A DNA stretch of 64,000 nt, taken from the IMG/VR virus record IMGVR_UViG_3300030099_004448, positions 1 to 64,000 of that record; one strand, given 5' to 3'. A program made the position numbers and the translations under genes. Below, piece by piece: positions 929 to 53,600 of the stretch (positions are counted from its first letter, which is position 1; every line of letters begins with the position of its first letter). The notes under the pieces are model-generated. The model searched no databases, was not told where the DNA came from, and worked only from the letters and a program-made list of their open reading frames with translations.

Positions 929-932
929 GAAG

Positions 933-961
933 TTGACAGAAACTCTCCGAGGGTTTATGAT
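933..961 (+). promoter_or_regulatory. Near-consensus sigma70 promoter (TTGACA-N17-TATGAT)
   Basis: TTGACA at 933-938, exactly 17 nt, TATGAT at 956-961. Confidence 0.75.
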
Positions 962-973
962 ACTCTCGGGGAG
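943..973. repeat. Inverted repeat enclosing the -10 box
   Basis: CTCTCCGAGGG-TTTATGATA-CTCTCGGGGAG forms an 11-bp stem including two G.U pairs. Confidence 0.7.
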
Positions 974-1081
974 CACAGTTTGAGCAGTTAATTCGCGTTC
1001 TTATGTGTTAGCGCGCGGGCGCGTAACCCCCGTTTTAAAAAACGCTAACTACCCTAACCTACAACGAACCCAAATCGCGAT

Positions 1082-1088
1082 CTAAATA
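1082..1088 (+). promoter_or_regulatory. T4-type late promoter (CTAAATA)
   Basis: Intergenic CTAAATA upstream of the small ORFs at 1174/1328. Confidence 0.5.
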
Positions 1089-1173
1089 TCACGAAGTAAA
1101 AAAAATTTTGCCCAGAAAAATTCCGAGTGCCAGGGTCCGCTCAAAAAATCTGTTGTCTATATAACATTTGAGG

Positions 1174-1341
1174 ATGATTGAAGAGTCTACGATGAAATTA
1201 GAACTCGACTTCTATGACAAGGAGGTCCTCGTCGATTGTATAGAATATCGTCTTCAGAACGACTTAGAGTTGATCACTAATGATTCACTCAGAGAAGAGA
1301 TTGAAGACTTACTTACAATTATCGAAGATGAACTTGTATAA
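1174..1341 (+). CDS. Small acidic hypothetical protein (55 aa; alternative start 1192 gives 49 aa); absent from ORF track
   Basis: Hand translation: MIEESTMKLELDFYDKEVLVDCIEYRLQNDLELITNDSLREEIEDLLTIIEDELV*. GAGG lies just upstream and the stop overlaps the next ORF. Confidence 0.65.
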   Translation: MIEESTMKLELDFYDKEVLVDCIEYRLQNDLELITNDSLREEIEDLLTIIEDELV

Positions 1342-2295: not shown

Positions 2296-2296
2296 T

Positions 2297-2327
2297 AAAA
2301 AATCGGCGCGTTTCGGCGCGTCAAAAA
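2297..2327. terminator. GC-rich UUCG hairpin flanked by A tracts (terminator for the - strand, or processing site)
   Basis: GGCGCGT-TTCG-GCGCGTC (2305-2322). The A6 at 2297-2302 gives a U tract only on the minus strand. Confidence 0.55.
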
Positions 2328-2367
2328 CCGCAAAAAAATCGCAAACGTATTCTAAGGTATTTTAATT

Positions 2368-3988: not shown

Positions 3989-4429
3989 ATGGCCTTAGGA
4001 CTTAGGGACATAGACAACTCAGCCTTCAAGTATAGGAAAACATCTCGTCAATTTAAGGACATTAGTCTTTCATTTACGAGAAATCCTGTTACTGGTGACA
4101 TATTGCCTCTTAGAAATGAGGATGCTATCAAGAAATCTGTTATGAATCTAGTGAAAACTAGAATTGGTGAACGGTTTTTCAACAATTTGTTGGGTACTAG
4201 TCTCCAAGATACATTATTTGACCTTGGATCTCAAGCTCTTGCACTAAGTCTTGAATCAAGTATACAAACTTTACTTGAAAACTTTGAACCAAGAGTTGCA
4301 AAAATTGAAGTTGAGGTTAGATTTGAACCCGATGGTAATGATTTGTTTGTAAAAATTAATTATGATATCGTTGGATTACCAGTTCCAGCACAAGAAATAG
4401 AGTTTATCTTAGAACCCACTAGAATCTAA
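3989..4429 (+). CDS. gp25: Baseplate wedge subunit gp25
   Basis: FKDISLSF..NPVT.D, AIKKSV.NL..T..GERFFN..LGT and NFEPRV motifs; immediately upstream of gp6. Confidence 0.93.
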   Translation: MALGLRDIDNSAFKYRKTSRQFKDISLSFTRNPVTGDILPLRNEDAIKKSVMNLVKTRIGERFFNNLLGTSLQDTLFDLGSQALALSLESSIQTLLENFEPRVAKIEVEVRFEPDGNDLFVKINYDIVGLPVPAQEIEFILEPTRI

Positions 4430-22578: not shown

Positions 22579-25500
22579 ATGGCACAGAATATCAATCTAA
22601 ACGCTTCTCCATACTTTGACGATTTTGATGCGTCAAATAGTTATCAGAGGGTTTTATTCAAGCCAGGAACTCCTATTCAGGCAAGAGAACTTACTACCCT
22701 ACAGTCAATTCTACAAGATCAAGTAGAACAGTTTGGTAAACACTTCTTTAAAGAAGGATCAGTCGTAATTCCTGGTCAAATTGCATATGACCCAGACTAT
22801 TTTTATGTTCAAATTGATGCAAACCACTTAGGAGTTCCAGTAGAAATTTATTTGGATGCTTTGGTTGGTCAAACAATCAAAGGCCAAATTAGTGGTGTCA
22901 AGGCAAAAGTTGTAAATTACATTACCTCAAATACATCTGAAAGAGGAAATGCAACTCTTTATGTAAAATATTCAACTGGCAGTGAGAATGATGAGGGTGT
23001 TAATGGAAATCAAAAAACCGTTTTTGATGCTGGTGAAAATCTTGTAGTTACTCAAGACGTAAAGTATTCACTATCTACTATTAGATCTGAGTCTACTTTT
23101 GCTACTACTCTTCTTACCGATTCAGTCGGCGAGGGTTCTGTTGCAAAAATTGCAGAAGGTGTCTATTTTATTAGAGGATTTTTTGTAAATGTTCCTGCTC
23201 AAGAAGTAATTCTTGATCAATATGGAGATACTCCTTCCTATAGGGTTGGTCTCTTTATAAATGAAGAAATTACGGTTGCATCTACAGAGAATCCAGATCT
23301 ATTTGATAATGCAAGAGGATTCTCAAACTTTGCTGCACCAGGTGCAGATAGACTAAAAATAACTACAACTCTAATTAAAAAGAGTTTAGATGATCTAAAT
23401 GATGAGGATTTTATTGAATTATTGAGAATTGAAAATGGTATAGTTCAAAAATTTGTAAAAGATAATCCATATAATATTCTTAATGATGAGTTAGCTAGAA
23501 GAACATATGATGAATCGGGTCACTATTATGTAACTCCTTTCTCGATTGAAGTAAAAGAATCTCTAAATGATCAAATTGGAAATGATGGTGTTTATTTGCC
23601 AAATCAACAAACACAATCTGGAATAACTCCTTCTGACGATTTTATATCTTTACAAATTTCCCCAGGTAAAGCATATGTTAGAGGATATGAAATAGAAACA
23701 ATTAGCACCACCTCTCTTGATGTACCTAAAGCCAGAACTACAGAATTAAAAGAAAATTCAAGTATTCCATTCACTCTGGGTAGACAATTTGAACTGAATA
23801 ATGTTCATGGTTCTCTACCAGTAGGATTCTCAACGTCAACAGTTTCATTACGTTCGGAAAGAACTGCAAGTGGGGGAACTGCAGCGGGTCTCGAAATTGG
23901 TGTTGCAAGAGTTTATGATTTAAAACTCAAAAATGCTGATTATCAAAATGATGCTACTCCATTCGTAGTATCATTATACGACGTACAGACTTATAATTAT
24001 ATCAATCTTAACTCTACCATTGATTTAACACTACCAGCTTATATCGAAGGTAAGAATAGTAGTGCTCATGGATACCTTGTAGAAGCAGTATCTGGAAGCA
24101 ACCAATTGAAATTGTATCAGGTATCTGGTACTTTTATTCCTAACGAACAGATTAAAATTAATGGTGAAGATGATTCCAGAACCATTAAAGATGTAAGAGA
24201 TTACAGCATGAATGATGTTAAACAACTTCATTCTAGCACCGCAGCATTCACTGCAGATGTTCTTCTGAACAGAGGTATTGCTATTGCTCCTCAAGGAGAT
24301 CAATTTAGTATTACTTCTGGTGGTGTAATTAAATCACCAAATCAAACATTTAGTGTAGGTATTCAAACGGGTGATATTGTTGCATATGCACAAGAAGGCG
24401 ATACTGTACCTACTTTTAACAAAGTAACTGCCGTGAGTGCATCTGCAAAAACAGTTACAGTAAGTGCTACTACATCGGTCACTGGAGTTTCTAATGGTGC
24501 TTTACCTGGTGGTACAATTACAGTAACTAATGTTTTAAAACTAGTTCCTCAGGAATTTAATCTTAATGAAGCATATCTCTATGCACCTCTTGAAGAAATC
24601 AATGTTTCTGATACTAACCTATCGGAGTCTAATATTGTAGTCAGAAAGGCATATGATGTTACCATCTCTGGTAATGGTTTAAATCAGACTCTTGAAACTG
24701 ATAACAGTATGACTCTGGAACCATTTGATGAGGAGGATTATAACCTTACTTATACTAGCACTGGTGCAATTGAAAGTCTTGATAATAGTAAGTTGACTGT
24801 AAATGGTAGAACTATTACGTTACAAGATCTTAGTGTGGCTAGTGGTTCTGCAAGATTAACAGTAACTTTCAAGAAGAAAGATCTTACTCCAAAGAGTAAA
24901 GTATATAATAGAAATGCCGTATTGATTGTAGATAAGTCTTCTAAGGAAGGTTCTGGTACTGCAACCACTTCATTCCAAGATGGTCTTACTTTTGGTAAAA
25001 TATTTGGAACTAGAGTTCAAGATAAACAAATTTCTCTTAATGTACCAGATGTTCAGGACGTTCTTGCTGTATTTGAGTCTAATGACGAGAATGAACCAGA
25101 ACTACCAAAACTCACACTAACCAACTTCAATGCTAATATTCTCAATACTATAAAAGGCGAGTATATTAGGGGTGAAACTAGTGGAGCGGTTGCTACAGTT
25201 GTTGTTAATAACGCAACAAATCAAGTAGATTTTGTTTATCTAAACGAGCAGTCTTTCCAGGTAGACGAAAAAGTAACTTTTGCAGAATCGCAAGTTACCG
25301 CAAATGTTTCTGCAATTTCTGTTGGTGATAGAGATATTCTTCCAAACTTTAGTTTGGTTCCAAATCAAAAACCACAATTCTGTGATTACTCTTTCCTAGA
25401 AAGAAACAGCGATAGTGCTCCGCCAACCAGAAAGTTAAAAATTATTTTTAATCACTATGTTCTAAATGCTGATGATCCTGGCGACTTCGTAACCGTAGAT

Positions 25501-53432: not shown

Positions 53433-53600
53433 ATGCAAGACGACATCGAACTTTCAAACTTGACCAAAGCACTTGAGTACGAACGTCAATCTAGAGAGAT
53501 TGATAAGATGACTCTAACTGAAGCGAGAGAGTTCGCAAAGTCTTATTTAAAACTCTACTTTAAACAACAGGAAGTAATAGGTTCTATAGCAAACATGTGA
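53433..53600 (+). CDS. NblA-like small helical protein (55 aa); absent from ORF track
   Basis: Hand translation: MQDDIELSNLTKALEYERQSREIDKMTLTEAREFAKSYLKLYFKQQEVIGSIANM*. AAGGAG RBS at 53421-53426. Ungapped by-eye alignment to NblA. The ORF itself is well supported; the functional call is less certain. Confidence 0.6.
   Translation: MQDDIELSNLTKALEYERQSREIDKMTLTEAREFAKSYLKLYFKQQEVIGSIANM

What the first reader, a model, noticed from the sequence alone, without database searches (positions are those of the whole stretch)
930..1173. Structured ~240-nt non-coding locus behind a strong sigma70 promoter: sRNA, origin or pac candidate
Seen: a consensus promoter (933-961) with no credible ORF until 1174. 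The interval has nested complementary segments: TCGCG 993-997 / CGCGA 1076-1080, GTTAGCG 1007-1013 / CGCTAAC 1043-1049, CGGG 1016-1019 / CCCG 1029-1032, and a competing CGTTT-TAAA-AAACG hairpin at 1031-1044. The sequence switches from G/T-rich to an almost G-free A/C run (CTAACTACCCTAACCTACAACGAACCC), followed by a late promoter and A tracts. Inference: a structured ncRNA or leader with alternative folds, or a DNA element such as an R-loop-primed T4-style origin or a packaging initiation site.
Basis: partly seen in the sequence, partly recalled or inferred. Interest (0 to 1): 0.6.

Follow-up and report, generated by a model that had tools for sequence, protein, structure and literature searches.

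The report
Conserved non-coding element of cyanomyophages
The flagged stretch is this phage's copy of a single-copy, non-coding module with a near-invariant 17-base core, shared by most T4-like phages of marine cyanobacteria and always lying a few kilobases upstream of the baseplate gene gp25. It is neither a gene nor a folded RNA, no database or paper I could search describes it, and its job is still open.

Summary
This includes the TTGACA-N17-TATGAT promoter at 933-961 and the G-free A/C run.

The "structured RNA" reading fails. The window folds no better than shuffles (z = 0.02), RNAalifold finds no consensus pair across 105 homologues, and an arm-swap test shows no covariation (p = 0.09).

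What is real is conservation:
- The core ACTACCCTAACCTACAA (1048-1064) occurs once in the 239-kb genome.
- It occurs exactly in at least 119 viral contigs whose flanks are under 80% alike.
- The surrounding module is found in 286 cyanomyophage records, one copy each. These include Syn9, P-SSM2 and P-TIM40.
- This holds although the window's gp25 protein is at most 56% identical to any isolate's.

The module's order is a rightward sigma70 promoter, a GC hairpin with C-run, an A-tract, the core, and an A-run/T-run block at a fixed 39-45 nt after the core.

It does not code for protein, matches no Rfam family and has no complement in host or phage genomes. The gene that follows it varies. gp25 always lies 1.3-9.6 kb downstream.

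My best guess, at moderate confidence, is that it works as RNA: an exposed docking sequence in a promoter-proximal leader. A replication origin or a DNA operator remain live rivals.

The parts
933..961 (+). Sigma70-type promoter TTGACA-N17-TATGAT, reading rightwards into the element
   Evidence: 11/12. A promoter of at least 11/12 lies on the + strand within 200 nt upstream of the core in 36/101 homologues. The - strand has 0 and shuffles give 0.3.
979..1006 (+). Semi-conserved block TTTGAGCAGTTAA ... TTCTTATGTG (CAGT and TTATG motifs). It may be a second, weaker promoter or the start of the leader.
   Evidence: CAGT is the most informative upstream column set in the 105-sequence alignment. 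In Syn9 the CAGT sits 7 nt after the -10 hexamer.
1007..1031 (+). GC-rich hairpin GTTAGCGCGCGGGCGCGTAAC followed by the C-run CCCCC
   Evidence: A GC hairpin ending in a C-run precedes the A-tract in most homologues. In S-PM2 it is followed by T6, like a terminator.
1033..1043 (+). T4-A6-C box. The A-tract plus C is nearly invariant.
   Evidence: Columns A46-A49 of alignment A1 are at least 90% conserved. The A-run ends 4-7 nt before the core in all 101 scored homologues.
1048..1064 (+). Core 17-mer ACTACCCTAACCTACAA: G-free and single copy
   Evidence: One copy in the window and in the 238,937-bp genome. Exact in at least 119 viral contigs. Variants occur in Syn9, P-TIM40, S-SSM7, S-PM2 and S-SZBM1.
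1065..1089 (+). Class-specific 8-12 nt (CGAACCCAAA here), then the TCGCGA/GCGAG block and CTAAATAT, which resembles a late promoter
   Evidence: Alignment A1. [AC]TAAATA lies 25-45 nt upstream of 44 of 253 ORFs in this genome. TAAATA follows the core in only 14-22 of 105 homologues.
1098..1113 (+). A8-T4-GCCC block (A-run/T-run junction)
   Evidence: It is unique in the genome as an intergenic motif. It is present in about 60% of homologues against about 3% of shuffles. The junction lies 39-45 nt after the core in 62 of 99.
1113..1140 (+). CAGAAAAATTCCGAG (a direct repeat of 937-951) and CCAGGGTCCG (the CAGRGGTCG block)
   Evidence: repeat D1, 80% identity. The CAGRGGTCG block recurs in S-SSM7, P-TIM40, S-ShM2, Sf-FS3 and P-SSM2.
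1192..1341 (+). First gene after the element (49 aa, MKLELDFYD...). It is not part of the element and is a variable passenger.
   Evidence: The first downstream ORFs fall into at least 7 unrelated families plus 17 singletons.
3989..4429 (+). gp25 baseplate wedge gene, the synteny anchor of the element
   Evidence: gp25 lies 1.3-9.6 kb downstream on the same strand in 97/119 loci, and in 31/31 loci that reach at least 8 kb downstream.

Best explanation
Window 930-1191 holds one copy of a modular non-coding element that T4-like cyanophages keep, once per genome, at the border between their block of small early genes and the variable genes leading into the baseplate module.

I think it most likely acts through its transcript. 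A sigma70-type promoter fires rightwards. The RNA begins with a variable GC hairpin. It then presents an A-tract and a G-free stretch that cannot pair with itself (ACUACCCUAACCUACAA). I read that stretch as a docking site for a conserved trans-acting factor, either a host or phage protein or a short imperfect RNA partner. That factor would set the fate of the rightward transcript, by read-through past the hairpin/U-rich signal, by stability, or by release as a small RNA.

Shown: conservation, single copy, non-coding status, promoter polarity, absence of conserved folding, synteny.
Inferred: that the RNA rather than the DNA is the active form, and that a factor binds it.
For: - Conservation far above the background. 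The exact 17-mer is in at least 119 contigs whose flanks are under 80% alike. The module is in 286 phage records, one place each. The window's gp25 is at most 56% identical to any isolate's.
- A near-consensus promoter pointing at the core occurs in 36/101 homologues, against 0 on the other strand. There is no leftward promoter downstream. The element is therefore transcribed in one direction.
- The core has no G on the transcribed-sense strand, and the 12 nt before it have only 10% G. This suits a sequence that must stay unpaired in RNA and serves no evident purpose in duplex DNA.
- The hairpin before the core varies in sequence but recurs.
- The element is independent of the gene that follows it, as expected for a signal acting on the transcript as a whole.
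- Contigs from RNA libraries run through it (X6, 701-1773).
Against: - There is no conserved secondary structure or covariation and no terminator after the core, so a classical sRNA is not evident.
- No complementary target was found in five host genomes, in their rrn operons or in the phage's own genome.
- The spacing from the core to the A|T junction is tight (39-45 nt in 62 of 99) across unrelated intervening sequence. Such spacing is more typical of a DNA-protein architecture.
- The RNA-library evidence comes from contigs only, with no strand, ends or DNA control.
- No binding factor has been identified.
Confidence: 0.38

Rival explanations
1. Replication origin of the T4 ori(uvsY)/ori(34) type. 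A host-polymerase promoter fires into an easily unwound A+T-rich stretch. The transcript stays hybridised and primes leading-strand synthesis. The displaced G-free strand serves as the helicase loading zone.
For: - The element is single copy per genome.
- A promoter is part of it.
- DNA from +35 to +70 after the core is 75% A+T, with a fixed A-run/T-run block.
- It is independent of neighbouring genes.
- It lies upstream of gp25, as T4 oriF does (the T4 map is from my own knowledge).
Against: - Cumulative GC skew is monotonic with no inflection.
- uvsY, whose promoter is the T4 oriF site, lies 64 kb away.
- The transcript over the core is C/A-rich and G-free, the weak polarity for RNA-DNA hybrids. 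No leftward promoter would give a G-rich RNA.
- By my knowledge, T4 origins need no invariant sequence, so the 17-mer would stay unexplained.
Confidence: 0.17
2. A DNA operator or architectural site. A sequence-specific phage or host protein binds the duplex 17-mer and, with the flanking A-tracts, shapes the promoter region at the boundary between early genes and the pre-baseplate block. It could act as a repressor, activator or insulator.
For: - The near-invariant sequence is non-palindromic and 17 bp long.
- An A-tract lies 4-7 bp upstream, and an A|T junction lies about four helical turns downstream despite variable intervening sequence.
- Promoters lie on both sides.
- Direct repeat CAGAAAnnnTCCGAG sits in the promoter spacer and again at 1113-1127.
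Against: - No cognate protein is known.
- The second spacing cluster (57-60 nt) is offset by 17-18 bp, not a whole number of helical turns.
- The strand bias (no G over more than 20 nt) is not needed for duplex recognition.
Confidence: 0.2
3. Structured ncRNA, riboswitch-like leader or attenuator with alternative folds.
For: - The window has a perfect 7-bp pair, GTTAGCG/CGCTAAC, that competes with local hairpins.
- A few homologues (L097, L007, L049) show matching changes by eye.
Against: - Folding z = 0.02 in the window, with mean z of -0.8 to +0.2 in homologues.
- RNAalifold finds 0 pairs.
- In the arm-swap test, a sequence's own arm was no better than a swapped one (p = 0.09).
- No Rfam family matches even at E = 10.
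Confidence: 0.05
4. Packaging (pac) signal, or merely a homology anchor for recombinational exchange of the variable genes beside it.
For: - The sequence classes to the left and right of the core combine in a mosaic, and the downstream genes are highly variable.
- Three records start or end within about 1 kb of the element: this one, S-E7 and S-SZBM1.
Against: - Three of about 290 records ending within 1 kb is what random ends would give.
- By my knowledge, T4-type phages package by headful without a strict pac site.
- A recombination anchor does not explain purifying selection on 17 specific bases, the promoter polarity or the fixed spacing.
Confidence: 0.07
5. A missed short protein-coding gene. 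Several GenBank records annotate a CDS across the element.
For: - The frame TAC-CCT-AAC is open across the core, and 62 of 105 homologues have some start codon upstream.
- CDS are annotated over it in S-SCSM2R, S-E7 and S-ShM2.
Against: - 43 of 105 homologues have no start codon in that frame.
- One frame has TAA in the core, and all three minus-strand frames have stops.
- Third-codon positions are as invariant as the others.
- ORF lengths scatter from 16 to 79 aa.
Confidence: 0.02

Closest known systems
Yfr1 small RNA of cyanobacteria (5' hairpin, ultra-conserved unpaired ACUCCUCACAC, 3' terminator)
   Same: A promoter-proximal hairpin is followed by a near-invariant, G-free, C/A-rich stretch that cannot pair with itself. 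The element is also very widely conserved within its clade.
   Different: The sequence is different and there is no Rfam hit. No terminator hairpin with a U-run follows the core. No complementary target was found. It is encoded by the phage and continues into downstream genes.
T4 replication origins ori(uvsY)/oriF and ori(34)/oriG
   Same: A host-RNA-polymerase promoter is followed by A+T-rich DNA, in a T4-type phage that has gp59, gp41/61 and UvsW. The element lies upstream of gp25.
   Different: uvsY is 64 kb away. There is no skew signal. The transcript is G-free. An invariant 17-mer is not a feature of the T4 origins (my knowledge). No replication data exist.
Lambda nut / rRNA-operon boxA-boxB antitermination sites and HK022 put RNAs
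   Same: The signal is promoter-proximal and co-oriented with transcription, at the head of a long one-directional gene array. A hairpin lies next to a conserved single-stranded sequence.
   Different: The core bears no resemblance to the conserved U-rich leader motifs of the hosts' rrn operons. No two-hairpin put-like fold is conserved.
PeSL cassettes (promoter-early stem-loop repeats) of T4-type hyperplastic regions
   Same: A promoter plus stem-loop lies next to highly variable small genes, and the flanks are mosaic.
   Different: PeSLs are repeated many times per genome. This element is strictly single copy and carries additional invariant blocks.
Catalogued cyanophage RNAs (CfrI, PhotoRC-II, wcaG, manA, glnA/glutamine riboswitch, abiF)
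   Same: They are non-coding elements of T4-like cyanophages.
   Different: None matches. The Rfam 15 scan of the whole window is empty, and the list in PMC9964418 has nothing at this locus.

Membership tests
Any Rfam 15 family | Covariance-model score at or above the gathering threshold | tested here: not met
   There were 0 matches in the 64-kb window. At E up to 10 on 600-1600 the only hit was a chance lncRNA match.
Structured ncRNA / riboswitch / attenuator | Folding energy below that of shuffled sequence | tested here: not met
   z = 0.02 on the + strand and -1.44 on the - strand. Homologue means range from -0.9 to +0.2.
Structured ncRNA / riboswitch / attenuator | Conserved base pairs with compensatory changes | tested here: not met
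   RNAalifold found 0 pairs in 105 sequences. In the arm-swap test own arms gave -6.45 and swapped arms -6.10 kcal/mol, p = 0.09.
Yfr1-like trans-acting sRNA | Unpaired, conserved, G-free seed flanked by a 5' hairpin | tested here: inconclusive
   The seed-like core is present and G-free. The hairpin recurs but is degenerate in some homologues.
Yfr1-like trans-acting sRNA | Intrinsic terminator closing a short transcript | tested here: not met
   No hairpin immediately followed by a U-run lies after the core. The T-run is preceded by an A-run.
Yfr1-like trans-acting sRNA | Complementary target in host or phage | tested here: not met
   Searches (hosts; own genome) gave nothing above controls. 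Short imperfect pairings are not excluded.
T4 oriF/oriG-type origin | Promoter for host RNA polymerase directed into the element | tested here: met
T4 oriF/oriG-type origin | DNA unwinding element just downstream of the promoter | tested here: inconclusive
   DNA is 75% A+T from +35 to +70 after the core, against 61% for the genome. Between the promoter and that region lies a GC-rich hairpin.
T4 oriF/oriG-type origin | Persistent R-loop and initiation of DNA synthesis | not testable with these tools
   This needs replication-intermediate or marker-frequency data. GC skew is uninformative.
T4 oriF/oriG-type origin | Same gene neighbourhood as T4 oriF (uvsY promoter, next to gene 25) | tested here: not met
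   gp25 is downstream but uvsY is at 64,910-65,302.
nut / rrn boxA antitermination site | boxA resembling the host rrn leader boxA | tested here: not met
   The best sense match in four host rrn operons is 12/17, and it lies in the spacer tRNA. Leader motifs are U-rich and unlike the core.
PeSL repeats | Many copies per genome flanking ORFans | tested here: not met
   Single copy. The A-run/T-run block is unique in the genome.
pac site | Defined DNA termini or read-start pile-up | not testable with these tools
   Only assembled contigs were available.
Short protein-coding gene | Conserved open frame with a start codon and codon-like substitution pattern | tested here: not met

The most novel reading that the evidence does not exclude
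The element is a family-wide control point that cyanomyophages cannot do without. One possibility is their long-sought replication origin. The other is a phage RNA whose invariant, exposed 17-mer captures a factor conserved across all Synechococcus and Prochlorococcus hosts. Either way, one short sequence would be a universal handle on infection by the most abundant group of ocean myoviruses.
Probability: 0.2. Interest if true: 0.85.

Novelty: new variant of a known kind. Interest (0 to 1): 0.62.

Why it matters
T4-like cyanophages are among the most abundant viruses in the sea. Their regulation differs from T4: they have no MotA/AsiA, and an abstract I recall (Doron et al. 2016) reports host-like promoters serving middle genes. 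Their replication origins are unknown.

A single-copy non-coding sequence that stays identical while core structural proteins drift to about 50% identity points to an essential and as yet undescribed step. It would help in three ways:
- It gives a concrete target for mutation in Syn9, P-TIM40 or P-SSM2, which already have transcriptome data or genetic tools.
- It is a family-specific 17-mer usable as a marker for cyanomyophage DNA or RNA in metagenomes and metatranscriptomes.
- It corrects annotation, because several GenBank records lay spurious CDS over it.

Tried and rejected
- **Rfam:** scans at gathering threshold and at E up to 10 found nothing. No tRNA or tmRNA was found.
- **Folding:** the window was folded on both strands and 35 homologues in three segments. 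None showed excess structure.
- **Consensus structure:** RNAalifold on 105 homologues found no pairs.
- **Coding:** rejected.
- **Antisense target:** the search covered five host genomes with the 17-mer at up to 3 mismatches and the 12-mer at up to 1. It also covered four host rrn operons and the phage genome by RNA duplex energy. Nothing exceeded controls. The best host hits lie in coding DNA of a repeat protein and in no RNA family.
- **Host rrn promoter:** the CAGTT/TTCGT block resembles the host rrn promoter region. One homologue matches 24 of 33 positions, but overall the scores equal those of shuffles. I kept this only as a passing note.
- **GC skew:** uninformative for an origin.
- **Late promoter:** it is a component in only a minority of homologues.
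- **TCCGAG motif:** it is local to this region and not a genome-wide promoter element.
- **TTCGTTCGTG block:** it is not repeated in the P-SSM2 early region.
- **Reads:** only Logan contigs of metatranscriptomes were available. They show presence in RNA libraries but no strand or ends.
- **Literature:** no held paper contains the core letters in a phage context. Sullivan 2010 does not mention the element. Doron et al. 2016, which holds the Syn9 start-site map, is not held.

Full report
**What is in the window.** The window is the first 64 kb of a 238,937-bp IMG/VR virus record. Its genes are those of a T4-like cyanophage: glycosyltransferase at 1543-2295, gp25 at 3989-4429, and psbA and uvsY elsewhere. 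TTGACA-N17-TATGAT at 933-961 is the best promoter-like site in the first 4 kb, at 11/12. The overall number of promoter-like sites there is what shuffling gives. The gap holds only a 26-codon GTG frame. Comparison with relatives puts the first real start at 1192.

**Is it structured? No.** The RNA from 968 to 1173 folds at -42.2 kcal/mol, against -42.26 for dinucleotide shuffles, z = 0.02. The other strand gives z = -1.44. Across 35 diverse homologues the mean z of the upstream, middle and downstream thirds lies between -0.9 and +0.2 on both strands. RNAalifold on 105 homologues returns no pair at all.

A few homologues seem to co-vary by eye. However, each sequence's own arm pairs with its own upstream region no better than arms borrowed from other sequences (-6.45 against -6.10 kcal/mol, 57 of 105, p = 0.09). 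Rfam 15 has nothing here.

**What is real: conservation.**
- blastn with the 246-nt interval finds 94 cyanophage records. The matches are centred on 1027-1125 and lie mostly in unannotated DNA.
- The 17-mer ACTACCCTAACCTACAA (1048-1064) occurs once in the window and once in the genome.
- After removing near-duplicates, 105 sequences remain whose flanks are under 80% identical in register.
- A second blastn with the S-CAM22 copy finds 286 records, one place each. All are Synechococcus or Prochlorococcus myoviruses.
- About 453 cyanophage records carry a gp25 homologue. BLAST alone therefore detects the element in roughly two thirds of them.

Individual phages differ as follows:
- Syn9 has the element at 53,500-53,516, between gp90 and gp91, with two changes.
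- P-SSM2 has it in a 958-bp unannotated gap.
- P-TIM40 has one change.
- S-PM2 keeps a degenerate copy (nhmmer E = 0.0017).
- P-HM2 has none detectable.

The window's gp25 protein is at most 56% identical to any isolate's. The non-coding core is thus far better conserved than a core structural gene. The divergent copies reduce the minimal consensus to about YCTAASCTAYAA.

**Anatomy.** Reading rightwards on the strand of the flanking genes:
- A sigma70-type promoter. A site of at least 11/12 lies within 200 nt upstream of the core in 36 of 101 homologues. None lies on the opposite strand and shuffles give 0.3. Its distance to the core varies from 34 to 171 nt.
- CAGT and TTATG motifs.
- A GC-rich hairpin of variable sequence that ends in a C-run.
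- A T/A-rich box whose A4-6-C is nearly invariant and ends 4-7 nt before the core.
- The G-free core.
- An 8-12-nt segment that falls into discrete sequence classes (CGAACC, AGGTTCCC, AGTGTTAC, AAGTATCC and others).
- A GCGAG-like block.
- An A/T box that matches the genome's late-promoter motif [AC]TAAATA in the window, but in only 14-22 of 105 homologues.
- An A-run/T-run block whose junction lies 39-45 nt after the core in 62 of 99 sequences and at 57-60 nt in 20 more.
- A CAGRGGTCG block.

The A-run/T-run/GCC block is found nowhere else between genes in the 239-kb genome.

**Context.** The first ORF after the element belongs to at least seven unrelated families plus 17 singletons. The element is therefore not the leader of a particular gene. 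The wider position is fixed. A gp25 homologue lies on the same strand 1.3-9.6 kb downstream in 97 of 119 loci, and in all 31 loci that extend 8 kb. In P-SSM2 some thirty small hypothetical genes lie upstream. The element marks the border between the small-gene block and the variable genes that precede the baseplate module.

**Not coding.** One frame has TAA in the core, and all three minus-strand frames have stops. The one frame that stays open lacks any start codon in 43 of 105 sequences, and its third positions are as fixed as the rest. CDS drawn over it in S-SCSM2R, S-E7 and S-ShM2 are probably spurious.

**Tests of mechanism.**
- Antisense target: five host genomes have no match or complement at 2 mismatches or fewer. 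The 3-mismatch hits are fewer than for the reversed pattern and lie in coding DNA. Four host rrn operons show at most 12 of 17 matches. In the phage's own genome the best duplex, -19.5 kcal/mol, falls within the shuffled range of -16.7 to -23.6.
- Origin: cumulative GC skew rises monotonically. uvsY lies at 64.9 kb, so T4's oriF neighbourhood is not kept. The only enriched promoters point rightwards, so the transcript over the core is G-free. That is the unfavourable polarity for a persistent RNA-DNA hybrid (established knowledge of R-loop stability).
- Transcription: contigs from four marine RNA libraries cover the region. One contig of 1,703 nt runs from 701 to 1773, and many relatives' contigs pile up only on 1032-1080. 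Contigs give no strand, ends or DNA control. This shows presence in RNA libraries and no more.

**Verdict.** It is not a folded RNA. It is the window's copy of a deeply conserved, single-copy, non-coding module of cyanomyophages.

I favour an RNA-level role, with confidence about 0.38. In this reading the exposed G-free 17-mer, sitting in a promoter-proximal leader behind a hairpin, is a docking site for a conserved factor that sets the fate of the rightward transcript. The reasons are the one-way promoter polarity, the G-depletion on the sense strand and the independence from downstream genes.

The tight core-to-A/T spacing keeps a DNA-protein architecture alive at about 0.2, and an origin at about 0.17. 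A structured RNA, a pac or recombination anchor and a micro-ORF are unlikely.

I found no description of the element in Rfam 15, in the list of cyanophage RNAs in PMC9964418, in Sullivan 2010 or by searching its letters in the held literature. The Syn9 start-site paper could not be read, so prior mention there cannot be excluded.

Noticed in passing
L001 2512-2730 (S-SCSM2R_94); L133 57-218 (S-E7); L005 863-937 (SShM2_083): GenBank records annotate hypothetical-protein CDS directly over the conserved non-coding element. By the frame analysis these are probably spurious calls.
   Followed up: partly
window 937-951 and 1113-1127; also 100-117: Direct repeat CAGAAAnnnTCCGAG, once inside the spacer of the 933-961 promoter and once after the A/T block. 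CTCCGAG occurs twice more at 100-117. The motif is local to this first kilobase and is not a genome-wide promoter element.
   Followed up: partly
L252 1-75 (host Synechococcus rrn promoter) against L097, L016, L119: The phage block TTCGT...GGCAGTT resembles the region just after the -10 hexamer of the marine Synechococcus rRNA promoter (TATGTTTCGTTGGTGGGCAGTTGAGC). One homologue matches 24 of 33 positions, but over all homologues the scores are no better than shuffles.
   Followed up: partly
L135 10265-11222 (P-SSM2 68,264-69,221): A 958-bp stretch without any annotated gene surrounds the element in P-SSM2. This is far longer than the conserved module. It may hold unannotated small ORFs or more non-coding sequence.
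   Followed up: no
window 1 (record start); L133 1-120 (S-E7 record start); L134 1-130 (S-SZBM1 record end): Three records begin or end within about 1 kb of the element. S-E7 starts inside the -10 hexamer of its upstream promoter. This is about the number expected from random ends among roughly 290 records, so I do not take it as evidence of a terminus.
   Followed up: partly
window 2296-2367: The intergenic stretch after the glycosyltransferase gene has a tandem TCGGCGCG...TCGGCGCG and several A-runs followed by TCG/CCG (AAAAAATCGGCGCG, AAAAACCGC, AAAAAAATCGC).
   Followed up: no
L233 5235-5330 (S-PM2 record about 25,035-25,130): In S-PM2 the GC hairpin is followed by T6, like a textbook intrinsic terminator. 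An extra GCCGCCG...CGGCGGC hairpin is inserted between it and the degenerate core.
   Followed up: no
G003 (Synechococcus MIT S9452) 938-25,390: TGTAGGTGAGGG recurs five times within 25 kb of a host genome. It probably lies in a repetitive giant surface-protein gene and is unrelated to the phage element.
   Followed up: no
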